A stretch of DNA of 64,000 nucleotides from Vitrella brassicaformis CCMP3155 (taxonomy: Eukaryota > Protista > Chromerida), in contig CDMY01000047.1 of the NCBI GenBank assembly GCA_001179505.1, positions 62,001 to 126,000 on the forward strand, given 5' to 3'. Shown here one piece after another: positions 1 through 22,085 of this stretch; within the stretch, counting starts at the first letter, position 1; each line of letters starts with the position of its first letter. The translations under genes and the position numbers were made by a program. The notes beneath the pieces were generated by a model. It ran no database searches. It was not told the origin of the DNA and worked only from the letters and a program-made list of their open reading frames with translations.

Positions 1-2430
1 GTGAATGCATCTGCGAGGGAGGTTGCTGGGTACCTTACCTGTGCGCACACGGTGTTGAGGTCCATCCTGAGTGTTTCGATCGTGCCCAGGTACAGCCACC
101 ATGCGCGCTTCTGAATGACAGGCACACGGACGGGCAGAGACCGCAGCAATCCCATACGTAGATGAGTGCATGAAGGGGGTCTCGGTCTCCGACGTGTGTA
201 CCTCCAGGCTCATGTCTTTCGCCTTTGTCAGGCCGAGTGCCGTAGCAGAACCGAGAACCATGATCACCGCGCCAACCAGCGGCCCCGCAGTCGACCCTGC
301 AAACCACACCGGCAACCGCACACACAAGTGCAGCCATCCGTCAGTGCACTTAAGATCTCTCTCCTCCGGTTGCTCACCGACGGCAGTGTCTTCAGCGCCC
401 AGGCCGACCATCATGCCCACAAACGCCCCGCCGAGCCAGGCCGCCATGGCGCACACCTCCGCCACATAACCCACCTTCTCGCCCACCAGTTGGAAGTTGT
501 ATACCCAGCCCCCCGCCACGGCATGGATCAGACCTATAAAGAGAAAAGCGACGTTGTTGAGGTAGAAGTCCACAGCGTCCAAGAGGAATAGGCCGATGTC
601 GGTGGCGTAGACGCAAGACACGGCGAGGCCGGCCAGACACATGGCCGTCACCACTCTCCACCGCTTGACGCGACGAAGGACGATGGAGTCCTGAAATGAA
701 CACACACACAGAGACACACGACGGGTGTGTGAAGGCGTATGGAGGGGCATCTGTGTAGGTCAGGTCACCATGAGGGCTGTGACGGAGGCCTCGATGAGAG
801 AGAAGGCCGAGTCGATGCCCAGCAGCACCAGCGTCAGGAAAAACAACACACACCTGACAGACAGGCAGACAGACAGACAGGCAGACAGACAGGGGCGTGA
901 AGGAAGGCACACGTTGATGTGTGCTGTCGATGCTCCTTGCTGACCAGACATGGCTGCCCGGTAGGAGGCTGAGTGCCACTGGATATGCCGTAAAGACGAG
1001 GCCAGGACCATCCACAGGAAGGTAACCCAGGTTCACTCCCGCCTGGTCAGCCAAGTGACCCAACACCGAAAACACCGCAAACCCTGAACAGACAGATATG
1101 CACGTACGCTAGGACGGCTGTCTGTCTGTCTGTCTGTCTGTCTGTGTGTGTGGTTTCTCTCTGCGCGGGCTGCCTACCAGCCACAAATGACGTTAAGAAG
1201 TCACAGAATGAGATGATGAGGCTGTCCTGGGCCACGTTGCACGACTTGCGGTTGTACGAAGCATCTGTCAGCAGAGAGAAAGTTGGTGGGGTGGAAGCGA
1301 AGCCGTGCATTGGGGAGTGCAATTGCAAGATGTCTTGTCGTGTTGCGCTGCTCACGTACACGCAGTCAGCACGCCGAAACACAGGGAGAGCGAGAAGAAG
1401 ACCTGGGAGGTCGCTTCACTCCACACAATCGGCTCGTCCTTCAGCACCGACAGGTTCCACTTGCCTATATACGCCTCCACCCCCACACCGGCGCCGTCCA
1501 GCGTCAGGCCGCGTATCATCAAGATCACAATCAGGATGAAGGGCATCAGCATCGTGAAGTAGGTGACACGGCCGGTGACGAAGACCCCACGGAACAAAGA
1601 TAGCCATATCAGAATCCAGACCACGATCATCCCGTAGAAGGTGTACAAGAGGAAGTCCTGCGCGCCGACAGCAGCCTCCCCAGCCATGACCACCGAGTTA
1701 TCGAAGAAGTCTGTGGATGCGGTGAGCGCGGTGCTGTCAGTTGCCGCCACCCACGGCAGGGTGGGGTTGAAGGACGCCACGAAGTATCTCAGGGCCCAGC
1801 TGATGATGAGGTTGTAGTATGTGGCCAGCACGAAGGCACCGAAGCATCCGCTGGCGCCGATGCCCCTCAGCCGTCGATGGATGGAAGCCCACGCCACGAA
1901 GTCGCTCCCCTGATCGATCACCGACACACACACACAGACAGACAGACAGACAGACAGACAGACGGACAAGATGCAGCCAGTGACGTGACGTGCCACCTTA
2001 CTATACGCTCACCCACCCACCCACTCACCTGGAAGACTTGTCCGAGTGCCAGCTCCAGCGTCATGAGTGGTATGCCAAGGAAGAACAGAGCCAACACGAA
2101 GGGAATAAAGAACGCACCTCCGCCCCATTTGAACGACAGGTAAGGGAACCTGCAGGCAGCCATACCACGAACACACACAATGACGCACGCCTCAACAAGT
2201 CTGGTTGTTGGGTTGTTGCGTGTTGTGTGTATTCATCGCTTGCTTGCCTCCAGAGGTTGCCGAGGCCGACAGCGGACCCAACAGCGGCGCAGATGAAGGC
2301 CGCTCGTGAGCTCCACCTCTCGCCTGTGTCAAGGGAAACACCGCAACCGCAGATCTGTCATGAATGTGGCCTTTACTTTTCTTCTGCTTCGCTCACGGTC
2401 ACTGTCAGGCGCTTTCACCGCCTCCATCAT
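1..2430 (-). CDS. Sodium:neurotransmitter symporter (NSS/SLC6 family), multi-exon, 3' end runs off the window
   Basis: Spliced exons 2430-2397, 2323-2248 and 2149-2029 give [54 protein letters not shown]...LELALGQ, the NSS TM1 signature. Later exons give YYNLIISW and [13 protein letters not shown]. Confidence 0.93.
856..891. repeat. Representative intronic (CAGA)n microsatellite; similar (CA)n, (CAGA)n, (GATG)n and (GAGT)n tracts occur in most introns of the window
   Basis: gacagacaggcagacagacagacaggcagacagac; many further examples (e.g. 1930-1965, 29025-29050, 38025-38055). Confidence 0.95.
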
Positions 2431-9322: not shown

Positions 9323-9627
9323 ACTAAGACAGACAGACAGCCAGCAGTAGACAGATGCGGGGCCGGGCCAGGGAGGGGGGGAGGGAGTGCGAAATAGGCA
9401 GGAGGGGATGAATATGATGTATTGAGGGCATGTGTTTTTCATCATTGTACAGTGCATTACACACACACATGCCATACTACGTGTACATGCCCTTTTCTGC
9501 CCACCACACTGCTAGAGCGCTGCTGCAATGCCGACTGACTGACTATACCTCTCGGGTCACGAAATGCAAAGAGCAGAACCTCCGGCTGGGACGTGTGGGT
9601 GAGAGAGAGAGTTAGGGGGGGGGGGGG

Positions 9628-9927
9628 NNNNNNNNNNNNNNNNNNNNNNNNNNNNNNNNNNNNNNNNNNNNNNNNNNNNNNNNNNNNNNNNNNNNNNNNN
9701 NNNNNNNNNNNNNNNNNNNNNNNNNNNNNNNNNNNNNNNNNNNNNNNNNNNNNNNNNNNNNNNNNNNNNNNNNNNNNNNNNNNNNNNNNNNNNNNNNNNN
9801 NNNNNNNNNNNNNNNNNNNNNNNNNNNNNNNNNNNNNNNNNNNNNNNNNNNNNNNNNNNNNNNNNNNNNNNNNNNNNNNNNNNNNNNNNNNNNNNNNNNN
9901 NNNNNNNNNNNNNNNNNNNNNNNNNNN
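9628..9927. other. Assembly gap (300 N)
   Basis: N run flanked by G homopolymer. Confidence 0.99.
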
Positions 9928-9936
9928 GGGTTCTTT

Positions 9937-9984
9937 ATTGCTGCCTACACTTTATATCTGTTGCAAGTGTGACCCTTTTGTACG
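9937..9984 (+). repeat. Dispersed 35-55 bp motif, copy 1 (attgctgcctacactttatatctgttgcaagtgtgacccttttg)
   Basis: Matches reverse-complement copies at 48984, 51803 and 58655. Confidence 0.8.
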
Positions 9985-10423
9985 TCTGCCCATATGACAT
10001 TCATCATTGTCTCTTGCTCGGCCTTCAGACATATCTCGTCGCCTGAAGCGCGCATTGATTGAATATATTGAAAGAATCCGATTCGTGTGCGAGAGCAGAC
10101 AGGTCCAAATCATCATCCTATGAGCACATGAGACCGTCCAAGAGATCAACACACACACTCTCCTATGAGACACTCACTCAATCCAAGAGATCAACACACA
10201 CACTCTCCTATGAGACACTCACTCAACTACCTTAACTCCTCAAAAATGGCCCATTGCACACACCGCGAGAGCGCACACACACACACACATGCTGTACAAA
10301 CCACCACAGAAGCTGCCTCCGTCAAATACTTCGTACCTATACCCCAGCACCGACCATCCATCTCACATCAACCGACATATCCCTCCCTCCCTCCCTCCCT
10401 CTCTCGCTGACTCGACACGTCGG

Positions 10424-13400
10424 TCACCTGGACTTGGGTGAGAGCGTCTTGAACTCATAGGCCAATGGATCGTCCAGATTGTCTATCTCAAGCCCCTCAG
10501 GCTCGTCCTTTTCCGCCCTTCTCGCAGTCGGCGATTCGGGCTTGTCCGGCTTCTCCACTTGAGGGAAAAAACTGGTCGGAGTCACGGCCGCAATGTGCGC
10601 CGGTGTGGGCCCCATCGACATGACACCGGTAGAGAAACGATGGCCCCCTACAGCGACCCCTACAGGTGTTTGCCCGATCGGCGGCATGTCATTCTCCTCC
10701 TCCACTCCGCCATGGTCGGTGTCCTCCTCGGGGGCGGTGATCCTGATCTTCTCGGGGGAGAGGCCGTCAGTTCTGTGCTCATAGGGGGGCATTGGGGGTA
10801 GCACCTGCAGCTCGGGGCTGGCCGCTTTCTCGATGTCCTCGTATGTCTCTCCACCGAGGGTTTGGTAAGCCTTTGGCGACCTGGGCGGCGACGAGCGGAT
10901 GTCGATGTGGTCGGCAGTGTGCGGGTGCGGGATCTCTGCCGATGACCGTGACTTGATCCACCTCCTGTAGCAGAACCACCCCACCACAGAGACGAGCAGT
11001 AGAGCCCCGACCACGCAGAAGATGACAACCAGGGTCGTTAGCTCCTCATCCTTGCCGCCGTCCTTGTCGACGCCGCTCCCGTCAGGGGGAGGGACGACGA
11101 TGGCGCCACTGTCGCCGACCACGAGGACAGGGTTTGGAGGGCCGAATAAGGGGCCGAGCGCTAAAGGGGAGGGGCCCGGGAGGAAGCCATCACCCTGGAG
11201 GCTCCTGCTGCTTGTATGAAGCGCTCGACGGCTGAACGCAGAGAACAGCACAGCCAGATCGCCGTTCGCGTGCTGCCGATGCAGACTGCTCCCATTCGTC
11301 CTCACCTGGCGGGGCAGTCGACGCCGCAGAAGGGGTCGAGACACATGGTGATGTCGCATGTTAGGTAGACAGTGGTGTATCCCGAGAAGGTGAACGAGTG
11401 TGTCGAGGCCCACGACCACATCTGCATCGAGTGGTGCTCCCACGCTGCCACATTCGGGATCGGCGCACAGTGCTCCTCTAACTGTGAAGGGGTCAAGGGG
11501 TGGGTGGTGAATCAGGCACATGCCATATGCAAGAAAGAAACAAAGGGTGAAGGATCAGAGCAAGAAGTGCCTTCGGCTTGCCATGGTGAATGTGTTCGGC
11601 GATTCAACGACGCTTTTGTCCACGGGGTCAGCCACACACCTCTTGAACACAGGATAAAAGCCACTAGCCTGCACACACACACACACAAAACGGATTGCTC
11701 CGGAACTTTCGCCGATCGGTAGTCTGTGTGTGTCAAAAGACTTGACGTACGGTTGTTTCCGCTCCGTAGTAGTATTTGGTTTGTGACTTGTCGCCGTACT
11801 TGTAGAGCGCCCCCTGCCCACCACCCGAGCACGTCGGGTCCGCACATATGTGGAAGAGCACCTTGAAAGTGCCGCGGTCCTCTACGAAGATGATGTCTGG
11901 GGATGGATAGACAGACAGCCACCAACACAAACGGGATTGTTCCCGTTCGTCTCTCCCTGTCTACTCTCTCTCTTTGTGTCTCTCCGACAAGGATGACTGA
12001 CCAGGGTCGGGCAGGTCGGTCTCATTGAGGGTGTCGTTGTACCAGTGACCGCCGTCCCATGCCGAGTCGCCTCCCGTATTGTTGGTGTTGTTGTACATGG
12101 GGTCCACCCTCGTGGTGAAGTTCCACTCGTGCGGCTCCACCTCTTCCGACGGCAGCTTCTTCTCCAGGCCCAGGAAAGCCCCTTCTACGATCGTGACGTT
12201 GTAGAGGATGGAGTAGTTCAGGGGGGCAATCTCGCACATGACCATTGTCGGGGGATTGCCATACCGGCACTGACAGACAGACGGACAGAGAGGGACAGAT
12301 GGGTGATATCTCTGTCTGTCTGTCTGTTTGTCTGCTTTGTACGGTGGATGTGTCGGTTGCGTCCACTTCGACATCAGAGACGTTGGTGTTGTTGGCCATG
12401 AGCCTTATGGTGCCCTCATCGGGACTTGCCGGCCGCTTGCCAGGCACGACAGGGTCGTCCAGCACGACCACCAGCACAGTGGCGATGCTCACGTTCTTCT
12501 CGTTGACCTTGGGGTACACCAAGTCCAGCAGCACCTGCGGGGCCAGGGGGTCGAAGGGGTAAGCGATGTCGACGGTGGTGAACTGCCAGTTGAGGGGGCC
12601 TGGTGAATTGGGCGTCCAATCGTTGCCCTGCCTGTCAGTGATGACTCCGTCGGCGATGCTGACTTCGTGGAGGGTGTTATCGAGCATGGGCACCAGAGAT
12701 ATCGTCACGGTCCTGCCCGCAAACTTCACCTGAGACACGAGAATGAGAGGTAAGAGCCGAGGTGCTGGCTGGGTGGGTGCTGTATGCCTGCCTGCTCACC
12801 TGGTTTGGATCGTTGATGTCGACGGCGAATGATTGGTCGAAGGGCAGGCCGGGATTGTTGACCTGTGAGGCGGTCACCCGCACCTCACCCTCACCGGGCG
12901 CCACATCCTCGTCAAACATAATCACCTGCAATCAACCAGGCAAGTAACACAAAGCCTGTTTGACGCGGACTTCTCTTGTGTCGTCACCGACCCACCAGGC
13001 TTGTCCCGATGACCGGCACATCCGTCGCACCATCCGAGGGCAAGTACACCACGGCGTTGGGCCCGTCGTTGTCTTTTTTTGCAGCCGTGCGGAAGGTCCA
13101 CTTGTAGCTGGCGGCCTGGTTGCCCGAATAGTCGACGAAGAGGCCTTCTTCCATCCCCACCCGGATCTCTTTATCACCCGGGAAGAAGCGAAGAGGGTTG
13201 ATCACCACCGTTGCACCAATTATCTGCCGCCAGCCACGCCGGAGACGCAGATGCATACGTTCGTGCATGGTAATAAAACCGGCATCAGTGGGTCTTGTTA
13301 CCATGTCGTTAGTGACTGGGAGGACTCGCGCGTCCACGAAGTCGCCGTTGGTCCTCTCCTCGACCGTGAGGGCAGCCGGGTAGGTTAGAGGGGAGCTCGA

Positions 13401-16400
13401 TACGCGGACGTCCTCATTGAACACCAACACTGCAACCAATCAAACAAGTGAGGGGCAACATACGAAGTACTGCATCAGCGTACCCACTGACACATCCGTG
13501 GGCACATTGACGGATTGCTTCTTCGGTCTGAGAAGTTCCTCTATCAGTTGTGGCGGGGTCTTGTCCGGATTGTCAGGTGTCTCGAAGTCGATCTCCTCTC
13601 CGCCGTTTGGATTACCGGCCTCGTCCTCGACAGTGCCGTTGCCGATGGTCACCTTGCAGTCCGACAAAGGCGGCAGCGGCTCCGGCGGACATATCAGCAG
13701 ATACTCACCCTCAATCCTCACCTGACACGAGCACAGAGAGAGAGAGACAGCATAAAGCGACAGAGACACACCCTGTGGACGATCTTACTGTCTCGTCGTT
13801 GACAGGGAAAGTGAGGGTGAAGTCGGGAATGCATATGATGGTGATGGGTGGGGGGTTGTCGGAGCCCGTGAGTGTTTCCACCAGGTCGGGCTCGTAGCTG
13901 AATGGAGGCGGGATGATGCAGTACGGGGGTGGGGGGAACGTGTTCCCGGGGTCAACTGGCGGGAACGGAGGCTTTGGGTACTTGCCAACTGTGGCATCAC
14001 ATACACACAGATACAATGAATGCCATCCCGGCAGTCCAGCCTCTTTCTCTCTCCGCACTCACTGTCTTCGGGGTCGCCGGTGGTGGGCCCCTGCTCGTCC
14101 GTTTGCACGCCAGTGTAGAAGACATAGTCGCTGAATAGGATCTGGCTGCCATCGTGCGCCGTGACCGTGGCGGTGAAGAGGTCGAAGCCGGCTCCGTTAG
14201 TGCCTTCAATGGCCCCCGAGCTGAATGATGCGGATATATTGGACAGCTGGGGGAAGTGAAGGGGCGGCTTGATGACCAGAAGGGGGCCTGACACATACGC
14301 CTGGCAGCACACACGCAAACAAGTGACTGCGTGGGTGTGGATGAGTTAGTGGTGGGCGAGATCACCATGGAAGGGTCTTCCAAGTCAATGATCTGGCCGC
14401 CGGTCGGTTGCCCGTCTTCCATATTGGAAAAATAGAACTGCGCCCCCGGCGTGACGACTATGTCCCGGTCAAAAGTGATACTCACACTCGTTGACACAGA
14501 CACGTCAGGTTCCAATGGCCGCGGCCGCAGGCTGCTGACGGCAGGTCGGGGGAAGTCTTCAGTGATCAGCGTATTGCTGTCGAACTCCTTCTCGAAGGCG
14601 GCGTTGGGCAACCCATCAGGATTCTGTAGAGATGGCCGGGCAAGGATCAGCAAGGATGACGGGTTCTGATATTTGCGTGCCTTGTTCCTTCCCACGCACC
14701 TGAACGAGTCCCTCTGGAGCCTTGAGTGTGAAGCTGGTGTCGGAAGGCAATATCGTCGGGGGATCTAGAATCACCGTCGTCCCCACTACGATCACCTAAG
14801 TGACCAACAACACGCCAGGCTGCACACGACACACACACATACACATGTCTCCCACCTACCTGTTCAGGATCGGTGAGGTCCATCACAATGGGTTCCTTGG
14901 TGGGCGGATCAGGCCCAGTGGGGACAATGACCACTGTCTGGCCGTCGCCCCGCTGCACTGGCTGGTCGAACTCGAGTATGACGCGGTCGTTCTCGGGATC
15001 CACGCGGATGCCGACGAACTGCGGGGGGTTGCCGTAGACTGATGGGGCGACTGTGGTAAAGGTCCACTCTTGGCCTGGAGGGTCGGGGCCGAAGCCGCCG
15101 AAGGGGTTGTCGTTGGGGTCGGTGATGGTGTTGGCCGGAAGAAACACTTCATACTGATAAACAGGGAGAAGAGTGGCATTTGTGTGTGTGCGTTTGAAGT
15201 AGCGCCCACTTTGGTTCCAGATCTGAGTGGCTCCGGCAGGATGATCTTCAGCAGGACATCGTCGGCCAGCAGGCTCACGCCCGTCGCCAGCACGCCCCTT
15301 TCAACCAGGGGCACCTCTATCACATGTCTCCCATCAGTCGCCACCACCAGCAGGACACCGCCAACAACCTCCACCTTCTCGGTGAAGATGACATTCAGGT
15401 CCACCTCAGTCGACACATCCACAGACCCATTCGCAGGCAAGATGGCCGTCACGCCGGGGTTCGTCTCATCGTCCGGTCCGCCTTTCTCTGGCGTGGTCAG
15501 GTTGTCCTCCCCCGTTGGGAACTCGATGTCCTTTTCGGGTGTCTCGTTGCCATTCTCGTCCTCGCCCGTGCACGCCGGAAGCTTTACGATGATCTGGCTG
15601 TTTGGCGGCAGGGGCTCAGGGGGAATGATGACGATCGTACTGCCCTCGATTATCACGTGGTTGCTGTCATTGAGGGGGATCTCTATGTAAGGCTGACCGG
15701 GGGGAGTCTGTATGATGATCTTGCCGTCGTTGACACAGGGCAGGATGGGCTCGGGGATGGGAATGACGATAGGGGCGTCTGGCGGCACGTCCGTCCCGTC
15801 CCTGGGCGGATAGGTGCCGCCGGTGTCGATCGGGGGTGCCTCTGTGTCCGACTGGCCGGAAGTGGTGAACGTCATATCGAAGGCAGCACTCACTGTGGCG
15901 GGAGATGTCTCAGTAAGAGCGACGAAGGCCTCGGCGGGGAGATTGAACTGGTAGTTTGTGCTGGGCTTGAGGTCTCTGGGGGGGTCGATGATCACCGTCT
16001 TGTCCACGACCTGAGACACATTGCACTGGCGGTCGACGAGAGGCAGGTGAGCGACGTTCCCTGTCTTTCTCACCAGGACAGAAATGAGGGGCACCTCCAG
16101 TGTGTCGCTGGCAGGACTCAGAGGCACAAATTGCACCACCCCCGGGGGGTCGGTGGAGACTCCATCCGACCCCGCCAGCCGGTTCAGGGCCACAGGCATG
16201 GAGTAATGCAGCAGCACATTGGTCGTCACAGCCACATTCTGGTCTTCGTTAGCAGGGACGGTCAGCACGGGCTCGAATGGATCCCCCGTGGCTTCAGGCG
16301 GCGTGACGACGGTCGTGAACTGCCACACTGCCTGCTCGTTTGACGAGATCCCCTCCACCGACTTGACCGCCCCGAGTGGCACTGTCACTGTGTACGTTGT

Positions 16401-19400
16401 GCCGGCGGCGAATGGCGCCGAGGGCGTGATGACCAGCACATCGAAGAGCGCCTCCGCGTGCCCGTCGTCAGAGTTGCCTTCTTCGCCGATTCTGATGTAG
16501 AATCTTTTCTTGTCGGCTGAGGGGGTCGACGGGACGATGCGGATCTCCTCCAGGGGAGTGCCCAGAAGCACTCTTATGTCATAGGTGACGACGAGGGGCG
16601 TGACCAGCGGCGCGTTTTCACTGTCGGGCAGGGGTGTGAAGCCTACTGCTTTTGGGGCGGTCAAGTCGAGTGGTCGTTGTGTGCGGAACGAGTAGGTGTT
16701 GGGTGGAAGCGGCTCGCTAGGGTTGCCGTAGGGGTCGGTGAGGAGACCCGGGGGGAACTGCAGTTCAATGTCAGTGACACTGGGGTAGGCCAGCGAGGGC
16801 GCAATGAACAGAAGATTGTCAGAGATGGACACCTGCAGCAACCCACACAGAGTCGCGGGCGAGTGAGTGGGGCCTGCTCTTCCAGCACCCCATCGATCAG
16901 CACGTGTCACCTGTTGCTGGTCGTGTATGTCGATGGCGATCGAGAATGCGGCGCCAGGCCTCTTGTCATAAATGAAGATGCTGCCCCTGCCGCGTACGAT
17001 GGGTTCGTCGAAGGGGAACATGATGTCGTTTTGCGTCATTGCCACGATGCTGCCGCGCCGGGGGATGGCCAGCTGCGGCAGAGGCACGGGGCCCTTGTCA
17101 TCCACCGTCCCCTCAAAGGTGAATCGCCATTCGAAAGACCTGTGTGTCCATGCAACGCAGAAAAGGAGATCCACGCCACCCTGGTGGTGTCTCTCTCTCA
17201 CTCACTCCTGTTCCCAGATGTTGCCGGCCTCGTCGCGAATGAGCCCATAGGGGATGTCCACCCTGTACTCGGCCAGCGGCAGCAGCACCCTGCTCTCGGG
17301 GAGGAAGAACCGCACGTCATTGTCCATGACCCAGTAGAACGACGGGTCGTTGGGGATGACCACAACCGGGCCTCCGGCAGTCAGGGGCGTCAGCGTGATG
17401 GCGGCGTTGGACGCTGCCACGACGATGGGCTCGTCGAACCGCATCTGGATCATGTCCAGTGCCAGCAACACGCCCGTCTCCTCGTGATCAGGAGCCAACG
17501 CACTCACACCCACATCGCGCTCTGTAACAAGCCAACCATCCAGTGATGGACGGACGTGTCTCTGCCTGCCTGCTGCTGCCCACCGAGGTCGGGCGGAGTT
17601 GTATCGTCGTTTGCCTTTGTCGTGAAGCTGAAGGTCTCAACTTTCGGTGAGAGGTTGCCCGCGGGGTCCTTGACGAGGCCGGGTGGGAGGACCACAGTGA
17701 TGAGCTGATCGGGGGGGAAGGCGAAGGGCGGGGATATCGTCAGCACGTTGCCCGCGATGCTCATGATCTTGTTCAGGAGACTCTCGAGAAGGTCCAGGAT
17801 CAGGGATGGGGGGTCGAGGCCCACAGAGGGCTGCAGCGCACGACCTACAACACCATGCAACACATACGGAGGGACACACGTCATTGTGTACATGCGGGAG
17901 TGCATATGGTGTGTCCCACTTACTTCTGCGTGAGATGGGTTCTGGTTTGAACACGATGTTGCCCTGTGCCGGCAGAATGGGCTCGCTGAATGGCAGGAAG
18001 AGGCTCGTCTTGGGGTCCACGTCCACACTGCCGTCCCGCGGCACCAGCTCGTTGTACAATAGATATGGACCGCTGCAACCGATTTACCAAAACCAAACCA
18101 TGTCACCCTTTCCACTCGCCAGCTCACTCACCTATTATCAATGTCCCCGTCAGCAGTGGTGAACCGCCACCTGACCGCCGCAGCAGCGTTGCCCACGGTG
18201 TCTGCCACAGCGGCCTCGGTGAGCAGCACCTCATAGACCATGTTGGGCAGCAGCCTCTTAAGAGGGACGACCAGGGCGGCCCCCAGGACCATCAGAGGCG
18301 ATATCACCACCTGGAAAGATTCCTCCTCGCTGGACAGGCGCAGCTGATACACACACAAATGAAGGATGGGAAAGGCAGATGTCTCGGCTCCGCGAGGGAT
18401 GGGAATGTCCGCTCACCGCTCCGCCGTTTTCGCGTATTTCTTCGTTGAATACGATGAGCACGTCTGAGTCGAGTGTGACGTTCTCTGCCTCATGTGGCGG
18501 TGACAGCAGCCGCACCTCTGGCGGCTCCCTGTCGGCCTCCACACAACCCTCCGCAAACCCCTTGTACCAAAGGTAGATCCAGTCACCTGCAGACACATAC
18601 ACACACAGTTAAGAAAAGCCATATCTATCTGGGATAATGGCGTGTTTCCGAGGAAGAACCATCGATCTTGCACACGTGTGCTGGCTGCTATACCTACCTT
18701 CGTTTGCGACTGGTTTGAGGTCAGGGTCGGTGTAGACAGGGTCGCTGCCGGCCTCCTGCAGCACCCGCAGGCCCGTCTCAGAGTTGAAGAGACAGAACAA
18801 TGCCTGCATCCGAGACACGTCCACCCCAGCCGCACAGATGGTAGTGTCGGTGATCTCAGCCGGACACCTGATATGCATGTAATCAACACCAACACCCATC
18901 CTTGAACGGCGTTTGTCATGTCTCTGCGGCAGTCACTGACCGACCTTGGGTCACGGTCTTCGCCTGGTGGGGTCTCCTGCATGGACGGCAGCAAGGCCTC
19001 GAGCAGGACAGTCCCCTCGCCGGGCGCGGCGTCTTGCGGCTGGAGGTATAGCAACGGCTGCGGCCGTGTCTCCAGGATCGAGTAGACCTCCACTGCGATC
19101 ACTATCGAAAAATTCTGCAGGTTCGTGCCTGTTCGTTGGTTGGGCGATAGGGGAGAGGGAGACATGACAGACACCCATGGGACCCGATGTATGTCTGCAG
19201 TTGTTTGTGTGAGCAAACGTACCTTACCTTGACCGTAGGGTATCATGAATGCACTCTCCTCGCATCCCTCCATGATGAGCCTGCCGTCGTCTAGCCTCCC
19301 CGTGCAGTTCATGGGGGCGTCCCAGGGCGACTTGTCCTTGCAGTCCTTGTCGAAATCCCACGATCCACCGGGGTCGGGCGGCAAGTCTGCACACACCAAG

Positions 19401-20039
19401 AGACAGAGATGGTGTGGTTGGTGGTGATGTGTGCGGATGTGGATGAGGATGAGGATGTGTGTGTGGGTGTACATCATGGCGTGCCTGGTATGGTGACATT
19501 GGCCTCGTTGTCGATCTGGACGGTGAGCGAGACGTCATAGCTCCCCTGGTAGTAGCACCTGGCCGTGATGGCCGGCGGTGACTCAGCGCCTCCGAAAATG
19601 GGTGTGCCGGGCGGGATACTGCCGATACAACAAACAAGCCACACAATGTCATGTGTGCATGCGCTCATTATCATGACTATTCCGCTTACGCCGCCACATT
19701 CTCGATGGTGATGACGCTCGTGGCGTTGTCCTGGGAGATGGTGCTCCCACATGGGTTTGTAACCGACTGTCCGTCGACAGTAGCCTCAAGCGGGGCGAAC
19801 AAACACTTCTGCTGTACGCCCTGTGGGGATGTCCGTGTGACCGACTTGCAGACATCATACTCAGTGGAAGTGCCGCCCTCCCAGTACCAGTCGTGTGCTC
19901 CCGAGCTGGCCAGGGGGAGGCACAGCTGCATGCCGTCAGACAAGCAGTCGGGCTTTATCGCACTCCACACCGGCGGGCCGCGACACACACCCAGCAAGCA
20001 GCACACGAGGACGCATGTGAGAAGAGGGGAACGCCGCAT
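10424..20039 (-). CDS. Large type-I membrane protein: signal peptide, ZP-N-like, about 14 Big_5/SbsA Ig-like repeats, ZP-C-like, TM, Pro/acidic tail
   Basis: Signal MRRSPLLTCVLVCCLLGVCRG. Repeats have the pattern D..PP....P......V.....I...F.E.I ... D..GN......W.FTT. Cys-patterned ZP-like ends. TM LTTLVVIFCVVGALLLVSVVGWFCY followed by RR. Stop at 10424. Confidence 0.85.
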
Positions 20040-20233
20040 CTTTCTGCTGCGGCTGCTGAGGGGGGTCGAGTTTGCACGGGTAATGGATGACGAAGGCGCT
20101 GCAGCCGATGATATCTTTCGCCAACGTTCGCTTTGCGCGTTTTCCTGTTCTTCCGCTTAGCTCGCATACCTTCTCGACGATCGGTGCAGATCTCCTGCCC
20201 TCTTCAGTTGTCGCATCTGACCCCTGCCACAGA

Positions 20234-22085
20234 ATGTCTTGGTTTTCGCGATTCAGCGGGTCGAGCTGCAAGGCACATCTTAAGATGACAGTCAACAGAG
20301 GTGAGAGCAGCATAGACAGACATCGACACACACGCTGAGATCAGAGGCAGGCACGGCGTCGGCATTTGTGTCTGTGTGTGTGTGTTTGTGTGTGTCGTGC
20401 GTCAGCCAAGCTGTCTCAGAACAAGCTGGAGAACAACAAGAAGGCGCTGCGTCGCGAGATGGCCCATCTGCTTCGCGAGGATAAGGAGGAGAAGGCCCGC
20501 ATCAAGGCCGAGCAGTTCCTCCAGGATCAGAAGATGGAGTGCGCTTTGGACATACTCGAAACCATGTGCGACCTGCTCGCCACACGGATGGTGAGTGAGC
20601 ATCACCCCAGCAACAGACAGACAGCTGTCGTGTGCGCCTACTTGACGGCGTGTGCACCGTCGATGTGATGTGTGTCAGCGCTACATCGAGAGTGAGAAGG
20701 ACTGCCCCTCTGACCTCTCGGGCACCATTGCCTCCGTCCTCTACTGCGAGAAACGGGCAGGCATCGACGATTTGGCAGAGGTTCGGAAGCAGTTTGAGAT
20801 CAAGTACGGGCGTGAGTTCGTCGAGACGGCAGCCGACAACAAGAACCAGGAGGTACACTTCAAGTTGGTGCAGCTGCTGAGCGTCATGCCGCCCGCCGAG
20901 CATGAGGTCGTCAAGGTCCTCAAGGACGTCGCTGCAGAGTACGACGTACAGTGGAACGCACCACCTGAACCCGCTGAGGTAAGACAAGACAGACACGCAG
21001 GCAGGCAGGCAGGCGGGGAGAGATGGAGGGCTACCATCGTTACGCATGTGTGTGTGCATGTGTGTGTATCGGTGTCATCCATCAATAATCCATCAGCCGT
21101 CATTATCTGACTTCAATGACATGGTCCACGAGGCCACTGAGGGGGGAGACGCATTCGTCCCAAGGGTACGGGGAGTGAGTGGAACAGCCAGGCAGGCAGG
21201 CAGCCCAGGCAGACACTCTTCGCGGCCTTCGCTCTCACCATTAATCCGTGACATCTCCGTATGTCCTTGTTTCGCCTGTGTGTGCTGTGGTGTGCAGCCG
21301 TCAGCTCCAGGTCCGTATGGATACCCCTTCCCAGTGCAGGTGCAGGGCGGCATGCCCATGGCGGTGCCGTACCCCCCATACCCGCCACAGCAGCAGCAGC
21401 AGCCGGTGCCCTCTGGGATGCCCCAAGGGGCCCAGCCCTCCATGCCCCCGCCGTACAAGTCATTCGTCGGAGCCGCCGGACAGTTCCCCAGCATGCCACC
21501 ACCACCACCAGGTCTGACAGGAGTGCTTATCCCCCTTACGGATGGATCGATGCTCTTCACACGTGTGTGTGTGTGTCTATCATTGGCTGGCCATGTCAGG
21601 TCCTCCGGCAATGATGGGTGGTGGTCCGGGTGGGGGTGTTTCCGATGCGTCAGCGGCCTCAGCAACGCTGCAGGACAAGATGGCCTACCACGACAGCCAC
21701 CCCATGCCACCCAATGTGACACCACAGCCATCACCGTCGCCGTTCCCCGCCAGCAGCGACTCGGCAGCACCACCCCCCAGTGGGAATGTGAGCGGCGCAC
21801 CACCACCCGTGCAGACGATGCAGCCCCCCGCAGGTGCACAGGAGCCAGAGAGCCAGGTGGCTGTCAACGGCGGCTTCCCCCCCTTTGTGGCGGGGCCCCA
21901 GAAGCCCTACGGAGAGGTCAGTGGCAGGCAGGGTGGGGGGGCGATGTGTGCAGTGCAAAGGTGGGACGGCGTGGGTGGATCTCTGTGTGTGTTGCTGTGG
22001 TGTGGTGTGGTGTGTGCAGGACACGCAGGGTGGCGGCAATGACGCATATGACCTGAACCAGAGGATACAGAATCTGCGCAGATAG
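20234..22085 (+). CDS. IST1: IST1 homolog (ESCRT-III/Vps4 regulator)
   Basis: MSWFSRFSGSSCKAHLKMTVNRAKLSQNK...EKARIKAEQFL...CDLLATRM and KQFEIKYGREF, then a Pro-rich linker and C-terminal MIM-like DLNQRIQNLRR*. Confidence 0.9.

What the first reader, a model, noticed from the sequence alone, without database searches (positions are those of the whole stretch)
19484..20039. N-terminal ZP-N-like domain makes this a split ZP module wrapped around an Ig array
Directly after the signal peptide the first two exons read PDCLSDGMQLCLP...DVC...KCLFAPLEATVDGQSVTNPCGSTISQDNATSVITIENVAA...AITARCYYQGSYDVSLTVQI (seen). This matches the remembered ZP-N pattern C...M.V ... PCGT...N.T....N.L ... F.C.Y....VSL. 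ZP-N and ZP-C normally sit next to each other; here they are separated by about 14 Big_5 domains. Inference: ZP-N/ZP-C pairing could polymerise the protein into filaments with the Ig arrays looped out, perhaps as a cell or cyst wall or adhesive matrix. This is the best candidate for an undescribed system in the window.
Basis: partly seen in the sequence, partly recalled or inferred. Interest (0 to 1): 0.9.

Follow-up and report, generated by a model that had tools for sequence, protein, structure and literature searches.

The report
Possible ZP-N head on Vitrella giant protein
A very long surface protein of the alga Vitrella (a relative of malaria parasites) probably carries the two halves of the animal "egg-coat" ZP module at its opposite ends, separated by 14 bacterial-type Ig domains, but the identity of the N-terminal half rests on one indirect line of evidence.

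Summary
A minus-strand, 28-exon gene (20039..10424) of Vitrella brassicaformis encodes a 2,523-aa type I membrane protein. The quoted peptide strings are in exons 1 and 2, and RNA contigs prove that splice.

The protein has, in order:
- a signal peptide;
- a 6-Cys N-domain (aa 23-161);
- a 189-aa region of unknown fold;
- 14 Big_5 Ig-like domains;
- a ZP-C-like domain, then an RR site, a hydrophobic patch, a TM segment and a tail.

The ZP-C end is fairly well supported: Pfam PF00100 at E=1.8e-4, just under threshold, plus language-model hits at 0.92.

The ZP-N reading of the N-domain is only partly supported.
- For: language-model features retrieve ZP-N/CUT_N clusters (0.93, 190 shared features, all ten best family hits in one clan). 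Cys spacing fits C1-C4 and C2-C3, and a Tyr sits at C4+2.
- Against: there is no Pfam hit even at E<=10 and no homolog among 1.84 billion representative proteins. The ZP-N "signature" Tyr is absent, and the atlas tool rates its own evidence here as weak.
- Undecided: both single-sequence AlphaFold models failed (pLDDT 34-36), so the fold is not determined.

Polymerisation as a "split ZP module" is untested. The canonical mechanism needs a short ZP-N/ZP-C linker, which is absent here.

The scan has already noted ZP-like modules on other DNA of this genome. What is new here is the split layout.

The parts
19974..20039 (-). Start codon and predicted signal peptide (aa 1-22)
   Evidence: ATG at 20039. 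The n-h-c pattern (MRR + hydrophobic run + CRG) is read from the sequence. The IST1 gene lies about 250 bp upstream on the other strand, leaving no room for upstream exons.
19690..19973 (-). Exon 1 part of the N-domain (aa 23-117): Cys32, 40, 64, 79, 97; PCGS motif; NAT sequon
   Evidence: Transcribed in RNA run X1. Exon 1 alone gives no homologs and no atlas signal (0.50).
19619..19689 (-). Intron 1 (71 nt, GT..AG)
   Evidence: A spliced RNA contig skips exactly 19619-19689.
19485..19618 (-). Exon 2: end of the N-domain (aa 118-161/162) with Cys138 (candidate C4) followed by Tyr139-Tyr140 and the strand-like YDVSLTVQI
   Evidence: Adding this exon raises the atlas score to 0.93 against ZP-N/CUT_N clusters.
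19387..19484 (-). Intron 2 (98 nt, GC..AG donor), from annotation and reading-frame logic only
   Evidence: An in-frame TGA at 19476-19474 rules out the next GT. Only the GC donor joins exon 2 to exon 3 in frame, and it reproduces P0001. No RNA contig covers it.
18534..19386 (-). Exons 3-6 (with introns) encoding aa 162-350: a 7-Cys region of unknown fold between the N-domain and the array
   Evidence: No Pfam hit at E<=10, no PDB hit, no internal similarity, and not hit by the array HMM.
12111..18533 (-). Array of 14 Big_5 (bacterial Ig-like, SbsA-type) domains, aa 351-2082, with introns
   Evidence: Pfam PF13205 at E down to 1e-31. An iterative self-HMM finds 14 domains. Eight introns in this stretch are confirmed by RNA contigs.
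11231..11879 (-). ZP-C-like domain (aa 2125-2255, 8 Cys, FTF + VYLTC-x4-C-x4-C-x3-C), with introns
   Evidence: Pfam PF00100 ZP-C at E=1.8e-4, 22.1 bits, profile positions 47-126 of 133. Atlas ZP-C clusters at 0.92, 205 shared features, recognition 2609. RNA run X1 holds 73% of the words of 10427-12300.
11225..11230 (-). Dibasic Arg2256-Arg2257, four residues after the last ZP-C Cys: a candidate cleavage site
   Evidence: Read from the sequence. Its position matches the consensus cleavage site of ZP precursors described in PMC7737619. Cleavage has not been tested.
11093..11134 (-). Hydrophobic patch NPVLVVGDSGAIVV (aa 2288-2301): a candidate external hydrophobic patch (EHP)
   Evidence: Read from the sequence. 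Its position between the cleavage site and the TM segment matches ZP precursors (PMC7737619). This is inference.
10967..11041 (-). Transmembrane helix (aa ~2319-2343)
   Evidence: Highest Kyte-Doolittle window in the protein (2.84 at aa 2321), followed by YRRWIK.
10424..10966 (-). Cytoplasmic tail (aa 2344-2523) and TGA stop

Best explanation
The gene encodes a 2,523-aa type I membrane glycoprotein of Vitrella brassicaformis.

Shown here:
- It is one annotated 28-exon gene, and both ends are transcribed.
- It has a signal peptide, a 6-Cys N-terminal domain, a 189-aa region of unknown fold and 14 Big_5 Ig-like domains.
- A C-terminal domain matches ZP-C. It is followed by an RR site, a hydrophobic patch, a TM helix and a tail.

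Inferred, at about 65-70%: the N-terminal domain (aa 23-161) is a very divergent ZP-N-type Ig-like domain. The likely disulfides are C32-C138 and C79-C97, with an extra pair C40-C64.

Most likely mechanism, all of it inference: the protein is a cell-surface or wall-matrix protein. The Ig array is a stiff rod of roughly 55-60 nm that holds the ZP-N-like head far from the membrane. The membrane-proximal ZP-C/RR/EHP/TM cassette works as in uromodulin-type precursors, so that cleavage at the dibasic site releases the hydrophobic patch and the ectodomain.

If the protein polymerises (I give this about 25-30%), it would do so by intermolecular head-to-tail contact between the ZP-N-like head of one molecule and the activated ZP-C of another. 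That would give chains with long Ig spacers. It would not be the canonical compact ZP filament, because the short interdomain linker that supplies the donor strand there is replaced by about 1,960 residues.
For: Gene and expression:
- CDS = P0001 exactly.
- Nine splice junctions are RNA-confirmed.
- The 3' exons are in the same RNA library.

Array.

ZP-C:
- Pfam PF00100 at E=1.8e-4.
- Atlas 0.92, 205 shared features, recognition 2609, all top families ZP-C/CUT_C/VERL_C.

ZP-N:
- Atlas 0.93, 190 shared features, ten of ten best family hits in the ZP-N/CUT_N clan. By the tool's own figures, >=170 shared features occurs in 9 of 10 same-family hits and only 1-2 of 10 chance hits.
- The two ends of one protein independently retrieve the two complementary halves of one module.
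- Cys spacing is C1-C4 106 aa and C2-C3 18 aa. There is a hydrophobic residue at C3+4 and a Tyr at C4+2, matching UMOD L393 and Y427 (PMC7737619).
- The domain is not a decayed Big_5 repeat.

Context (unchecked scan notes): this genome has many other ZP-like genes, three of them followed up.

Precedents: isolated ZP-N can polymerise on its own (PMC1479692), and standalone ZP-C exists (PMC7456536).
Against: - No Pfam ZP-N or CUT_N hit even at E<=10.
- No relative of exon 1 among 1.84 billion representatives, and none in three word-indexed searches.
- PDB phmmer finds no ZP protein.
- Atlas recognition is 1761, below 2300, so the tool itself calls a high score weak evidence. Exon 1 alone scored 0.50.
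- The ZP-N signature Tyr (UMOD Y402, C3+13) is Ile110 here.
- AF2 models have pLDDT 34-36 and the fold searches are noise, so the fold is not determined.
- No single RNA molecule spanning both ends was seen.
- The uromodulin mechanism uses the short interdomain linker as a donor strand, and no such linker exists here.
Confidence: 0.55

Rival explanations
1. The N-terminal domain is an unrelated, lineage-specific disulfide-stabilised beta-sandwich. It could be a generic Ig-like domain or, for example, a 6-Cys/s48-45-like domain as in apicomplexan surface proteins. It serves as the distal binding head of a rod-like adhesin. The C-terminal ZP-C is then a standalone membrane-proximal domain, and there is no ZP module, split or otherwise.
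For: - It is an orphan at sequence level.
- There is no Pfam ZP-N hit.
- The only PDB sequence hit is the nanobody D-E-F strand motif TISxDNA, E=0.006, which points to a generic Ig-like sandwich.
- The signature Tyr is missing.
- Atlas recognition is below the tool's mark.
- Standalone ZP-C domains are documented (PMC7456536).
- The domain has exactly six Cys.
Against: - All ten best atlas family hits are in the ZP-N/CUT_N clan, with 190 shared features.
- Pfam gives no s48_45, PAN or other family hit at E<=10 either.
- It would be a coincidence for a chance hit to fall on the exact partner of the ZP-C found at the other end.
Confidence: 0.3
2. The N-terminal 340 aa form a complete but very divergent ZP module of their own: ZP-N at aa 23-161, plus a cryptic ZP-C within aa 162-350. 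The C-terminal ZP-C is an extra copy, so the module is not split.
For: - aa 162-350 has the right size and position for a linker plus ZP-C, and it holds 7 Cys.
- Its fold is unknown.
- The poor AF2 model predicts it to be all-beta.
Against: - No Pfam ZP-C hit for aa 160-360 at E<=10, whereas the C-terminal domain is detected.
- No similarity to the C-terminal ZP-C.
- No C-x-x-x-x-C type ZP-C end motif is visible.
Confidence: 0.08
3. It is a gene-model artefact: the 5' exons with the N-domain and the 3' part with the ZP-C belong to different genes or transcripts that the annotation fused.
For: RNA contigs are short (<=696 nt), and depth is zero over 18550-19349 and 17150-17549. No molecule spanning both ends was seen.
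Against: - All 27 introns keep the frame with GT/GC..AG sites, and the CDS has no internal stop.
- Nine junctions are RNA-confirmed and none conflicts with the model.
- The Big_5 array runs continuously across the supposed break.
- The first Big_5 domain begins within exon 6, whose first codons still belong to the N-terminal region.
- There is a single signal peptide at the start and a single TM segment at the end.
Confidence: 0.04

Closest known systems
Uromodulin / ZP3-type zona pellucida module precursors (Metazoa)
   Same: - Signal peptide.
- A ZP-C-type domain with an FxF-like motif and a C-terminal Cys cluster.
- A basic cleavage site right after the last Cys, then a hydrophobic patch, then a membrane anchor (PMC7737619).
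- An N-terminal domain with ZP-N-like Cys spacing and a Tyr at C4+2.
   Different: - ZP-N and ZP-C are not adjacent. About 1,960 residues lie between them (189 aa of unknown fold, 14 Big_5 domains and a 42-aa linker) instead of a linker of about 25-30 aa.
- The signature Tyr is absent.
- There are extra Cys pairs in both domains.
- The site is RR rather than a furin R-x-K/R-R site.
- The organism is an alveolate alga, whereas a 2026 review treats the canonical module as an animal trait (PMC13361971).
Isolated ZP-N domains (ZP2/ZP1/ZP4 N-terminal repeats, VERL repeats, PLAC1/Oosp)
   Same: A ZP-N-type domain at the N-terminus, away from any ZP-C and used as a binding or polymerising unit. ZP-N alone can form filaments (PMC1479692).
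   Different: Those domains are recognisable by profiles or structures, whereas this one has no HMM-level match. Those proteins are from animals.
Standalone ZP-C proteins of nematodes (CUTL-19, T01D1.8, F46G11.6)
   Same: A ZP-C that is not immediately preceded by a ZP-N (PMC7456536).
   Different: The nematode proteins are short, have mostly lost the cleavage site, and have no ZP-N anywhere. This protein keeps an RR site, a hydrophobic patch and a TM segment, and may have a ZP-N at the far end.
Bacterial giant adhesins / S-layer proteins with Big_5 (SbsA-type) Ig arrays
   Same: A long tandem array of Big_5 domains forming a rod with a distinct terminal domain.
   Different: This is a eukaryotic, intron-rich gene with a type I membrane anchor and ZP-type end domains.

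Membership tests
ZP-N domain (Pfam PF23344 / CUT_N clan) | Significant match to a ZP-N/CUT_N profile HMM | tested here: not met
   hmmscan of aa 23-165 and aa 23-360 against Pfam-A at E<=10 gave 0 families.
ZP-N domain (Pfam PF23344 / CUT_N clan) | Four conserved Cys at C1-C4 / C2-C3 compatible spacing (PMC1479692) | tested here: met
   Cys32...Cys138 (106 aa) and Cys79...Cys97 (18 aa), plus an extra pair Cys40/Cys64. With six Cys, other assignments are possible.
ZP-N domain (Pfam PF23344 / CUT_N clan) | Disulfide connectivity 1-4, 2-3 | not testable with these tools
   This needs mass spectrometry or a confident structure. The AF2 models had pLDDT 34-36.
ZP-N domain (Pfam PF23344 / CUT_N clan) | Ig-like sandwich with an E'FG extension (PMC7737619) | tested here: inconclusive
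   Two AF2 single-sequence models failed. The Foldseek and atlas shape searches returned noise. There are no homologs to build an alignment from.
ZP-N domain (Pfam PF23344 / CUT_N clan) | Signature Tyr of the E'FG extension (UMOD Y402) and second near-invariant Tyr (UMOD Y427) | tested here: inconclusive
   Tyr140 lies at C4+2, which fits Y427. At C3+13 (+/-2) there is Ile/Thr/Val and no aromatic, so Y402 is not conserved. The register was set by hand from the residue numbers in PMC7737619, not by a scored alignment.
ZP-N domain (Pfam PF23344 / CUT_N clan) | Recognition by an independent sequence-feature method | tested here: met
   ESM atlas: top score 0.93, 190 of 256 shared features, 10/10 best family hits in the ZP-N/CUT_N clan. 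The tool's caveat applies: recognition is 1761, below 2300.
ZP-C domain (Pfam PF00100) | Profile HMM match | tested here: inconclusive
   E=1.8e-4 and 22.1 bits, just under the gathering cutoff of 24.6, covering profile positions 47-126 of 133. It meets the E<0.1 + Cys + signal-peptide criterion used in PMC1479692.
ZP-C domain (Pfam PF00100) | Conserved Cys 5-8 (+a,b) cluster, followed by a cleavage site, an EHP and a membrane anchor | tested here: met
   Eight Cys at 2136-2252, including C-x4-C-x4-C-x3-C; RR at 2256-2257; hydrophobic patch at 2288-2301; TM at 2319-2343. The function of these elements has not been tested.
Canonical ZP module (polymerisation module) | ZP-N immediately followed by a short interdomain linker and ZP-C | tested here: not met
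   The two domains are about 1,960 residues apart, at aa 23-161 and aa 2125-2255.
Canonical ZP module (polymerisation module) | Demonstrated polymerisation into filaments | not testable with these tools
   This needs recombinant expression with EM, or wall proteomics.
Big_5 / SbsA Ig-like array | Pfam PF13205 matches above threshold, in tandem | tested here: met
   E=1e-31 to 4e-15 on four slices. The self-HMM finds 14 domains.

The most novel reading that the evidence does not exclude
A true ZP module has been pulled apart in a non-animal. The ZP-N and ZP-C of this alveolate protein pair between molecules after cleavage at the RR site, building head-to-tail filaments whose subunits are 55-60 nm Ig rods, perhaps in the wall of the vegetative cell or the sporangium. 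That would show that ZP-N/ZP-C recognition can work without the interdomain linker, and that ZP-type polymerisation exists outside animals and their closest relatives.
Probability: 0.2. Interest if true: 0.85.

Novelty: new variant of a known kind. Interest (0 to 1): 0.6.

Why it matters
Current reviews treat the ZP module as an invention of animals, and ZP-C is expected to sit directly after a ZP-N.

If both ends of this Vitrella protein are ZP-derived, it adds a case from a relative of apicomplexan parasites. More specifically, it would be the first layout in which the two halves are separated by a long Ig rod. That would be a natural experiment on whether ZP-N/ZP-C recognition needs the interdomain linker. 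It would also give a candidate structural or adhesive protein for the little-known chromerid cell wall.

The scan has already flagged ZP-like genes elsewhere in this genome, so ZP domains being present in Vitrella is not new to the scan. The split architecture is.

Tried and rejected
- **Exhaustive phmmer of exon 1 against 1.84 billion representatives:** it found only the protein itself plus a bacterial cadherin-repeat protein (P0002, 8 stretches). I rejected P0002 as a repeat-summed artefact.
- **Word-indexed searches:** I searched aa 23-360 and aa 2090-2523 within the full-length protein, and aa 23-165 within a 500-aa slice at E<=10. All were empty.
- **Metagenome scan for N-domain variants:** none found.
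- **PDB phmmer on four slices:** no ZP protein. There was only a nanobody strand motif and irrelevant enzymes.
- **AF2 single-sequence models of aa 23-360 and aa 26-162:** pLDDT was 33.8 and 36.1, so both are unusable. Foldseek against PDB on both models, and the atlas shape search, gave noise. ZP3 ZP-N at rank 46 with E=5.7 is not evidence.
- **Internal similarity:** the N-region shows no similarity to aa 166-360 or to the C-terminal region.
- **Rival 'decayed Big_5 repeat':** rejected, because the array's own HMM, run with filters off, does not touch aa 1-350 or aa 2083-2523.
- **Precomputed Pfam record of the protein:** only Big_5 is listed.
- **Profile-profile comparison with a ZP-N alignment:** I could not run it, because no tool gave me ZP-N sequences by reference.
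- **Literature:** no paper in the library links ZP domains with Vitrella or Chromera.

Full report
**1. What is there**

The finding lies on the minus strand. An ATG at 20039 opens exon 1 (20039..19690).

Exon 2 (19618..19485) supplies the ARCYYQGSYDVSLTVQI part. Spliced contigs of an RNA run (X1, 100% identical) skip exactly 19619-19689 (GT..AG on the gene strand). The exon 1-exon 2 join is therefore proven.

An exhaustive HMMER search with exon 1 returned the annotated product of this gene, P0001 (2,523 aa). The source is Vitrella brassicaformis CCMP3155 (assembly record).

Splicing the window by hand reproduces P0001 exactly. There are 28 exons from 20039 to 10427, a TGA stop at 10426-10424, 25 GT-AG introns and 2 GC-AG introns. 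All nine junctions seen in RNA within 14150-20140 agree with this model. The same RNA library holds 73% of the sampled words of the 3' region, where exons make up about 78%. The IST1 gene starts about 250 bp upstream on the other strand, so the N-domain really is the start of the protein.

**2. Architecture**

- aa 1-22: signal peptide, inferred from the sequence.
- aa 23-161: N-domain with six Cys (32, 40, 64, 79, 97, 138).
- aa 162-350: a 7-Cys region with no match to anything.
- aa 351-2082: 14 Big_5 domains (Pfam; self-HMM).
- aa 2083-2124: a short N-glycan-rich linker.
- aa 2125-2255: an 8-Cys domain.
- aa 2256-2257: Arg-Arg.
- aa 2288-2301: a hydrophobic patch.
- aa ~2319-2343: the transmembrane helix.
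- aa 2344-2523: a 180-aa tail.

The 189-aa unknown region was overlooked.

**3. Is the C-terminal domain ZP-C?**

Probably. Pfam's ZP-C model (PF00100) matches at E=1.8e-4 and 22.1 bits, against a gathering score of 24.6, over profile positions 47-126 of 133.

The language-model atlas gives ZP-C, CUT_C and VERL_C clusters only. The top score is 0.92 with 205 shared features, and recognition is 2609, above the tool's mark.

The sequence shows an FTF motif, then VYLTC and a C-x4-C-x4-C-x3-C cluster. Four residues later comes RR, then a hydrophobic strand-like patch, then a TM segment. This is the order described for ZP precursors (PMC7737619). PDB sequence searches found nothing.

**4. Is the N-terminal domain ZP-N?**

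This is the core of the finding, and the answer is "likely but unproven".

Against:
- Pfam finds no family in aa 23-165 or aa 23-360 even at E<=10.
- Exhaustive phmmer of exon 1 against 1.84 billion representatives finds only the protein itself and a spurious bacterial repeat protein.
- The word-indexed searches find nothing, including the one tuned to the length range of ordinary ZP proteins.
- A metagenome scan finds nothing.
- PDB phmmer gives only a nanobody hit on the TISxDNA strand motif (E=0.006). At most this says "Ig-like sandwich".
With no homologs for an alignment, two AF2 runs gave pLDDT 33.8 and 36.1. Fold searches on those models are noise.

For:
- When the whole domain (exons 1+2) is given to the atlas, the nearest named clusters are ZP-N/CUT_N throughout. 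The top score is 0.93 with 190 of 256 shared features, and all ten best family hits fall in one clan.
- By the tool's own calibration, 170 or more shared features is seen in 9 of 10 same-family hits but only 1-2 of 10 chance hits.
- The tool also warns that recognition below 2300 (here 1761) makes a high score weak evidence. Exon 1 alone scored only 0.50.

The strongest argument is the conjunction. The two ends of one protein independently retrieve the two complementary halves of one module.

Landmarks fit in part:
- Cys32...Cys138 and Cys79...Cys97 have ZP-N-like spacing (defining feature in PMC1479692).
- I set the register by hand from the residue numbers in PMC7737619 (L393, Y402, Y427). 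On that register C3+4 is Ile101 (fits L393) and C4+2 is Tyr140 (fits Y427).
- The "signature" Tyr at C3+13 is Ile110, with no aromatic nearby.

The domain is not a decayed Big_5 repeat and has no similarity to the rest of the protein. I put the ZP-N reading at about 65-70%.

**5. Does this make a "split ZP module" that polymerises?**

Not shown. In uromodulin the short interdomain linker is an active part of the polymer. After the precursor is cleaved, the linker replaces the external hydrophobic patch of the previous subunit by donor-strand exchange, and it also pairs with strand G of the next ZP-N (PMC7737619). Here that linker is replaced by about 1,960 residues, so the canonical interlocked filament cannot simply be assumed.

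Two things remain possible:
- intermolecular ZP-N/ZP-C contact, giving head-to-tail chains with Ig-rod spacers;
- independent use of the two domains, as a distal binding head and a membrane-proximal release cassette.

Both have precedents. ZP-N alone polymerises (PMC1479692), and standalone ZP-C exists in nematodes (PMC7456536). A further open point is whether aa 162-350 hides a ZP-C partner, which would undo the "split" reading.

**6. Novelty**

A 2026 review treats the canonical ZP module as an animal trait, with only ZP-like sequences in choanoflagellates (PMC13361971). No paper in the library links ZP domains with chromerids.

Earlier notes of this scan list at least 15 ZP-like findings on other DNA of the same genome. 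Three were followed up as predicted ZP modules. I did not test those. They raise the prior for ZP-derived domains here, and they mean that the presence of ZP domains in Vitrella is not new to the scan.

What is particular to this gene is the layout: ZP-N-like head, 14 bacterial-type Ig domains, then ZP-C with its maturation cassette. No ortholog with the same ends was found.

**7. Verdict**

- Observation: confirmed.
- Interpretation: partly supported.
- Novelty: a new variant of a known kind, if the N-domain holds.
- Interest: moderate to high (0.6), held back by the single indirect line of evidence for ZP-N and by the untested mechanism.

Noticed in passing
window 19387-19484 and 11482-11581 (minus strand): Two of the gene's 27 introns use GC..AG instead of GT..AG (introns 2 and 26). 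For intron 2 an in-frame TGA rules out the nearest GT donor. Neither intron is covered by the RNA contigs I laid.
   Followed up: partly
window 18534-19485 (minus strand; aa 162-350): A 189-aa secreted region with 7 Cys and no detectable family, structure match or internal similarity. It lies between the N-domain and the first Big_5 domain.
   Followed up: partly
window 19700-19760 (aa ~99-113): The stretch STISQDNATSVITIEN resembles the framework-3 motif (RFTISRDNA..) of camelid VHH domains. It produced the only PDB sequence hit (nanobody 4grw_F, E=0.006). This is probably a generic D-E strand pattern of Ig-like sandwiches, or chance.
   Followed up: no
window 13900-14100 region (aa 1564-1628): The gap in the Big_5 array between domains 10 and 11 is Pro-rich (PPFPPVDPGNTFPPPPYCIIPPPF), and the next domain matches only the second half of the array HMM. 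This may be a degenerate 15th domain or a hinge.
   Followed up: no
window 20236-20700 (+ strand): A divergently transcribed neighbour encodes an IST1 (ESCRT-III-associated) homolog (Pfam Ist1 in the contig record). The shared intergenic region is only about 200-250 bp.
   Followed up: no
window 9593-9997: A run of N (an assembly gap) lies about 430 bp downstream of the gene's stop codon.
   Followed up: no
window 1352-1996 (minus strand): An ORF that reads like a sodium:neurotransmitter symporter (SNF) family transporter fragment.
   Followed up: no
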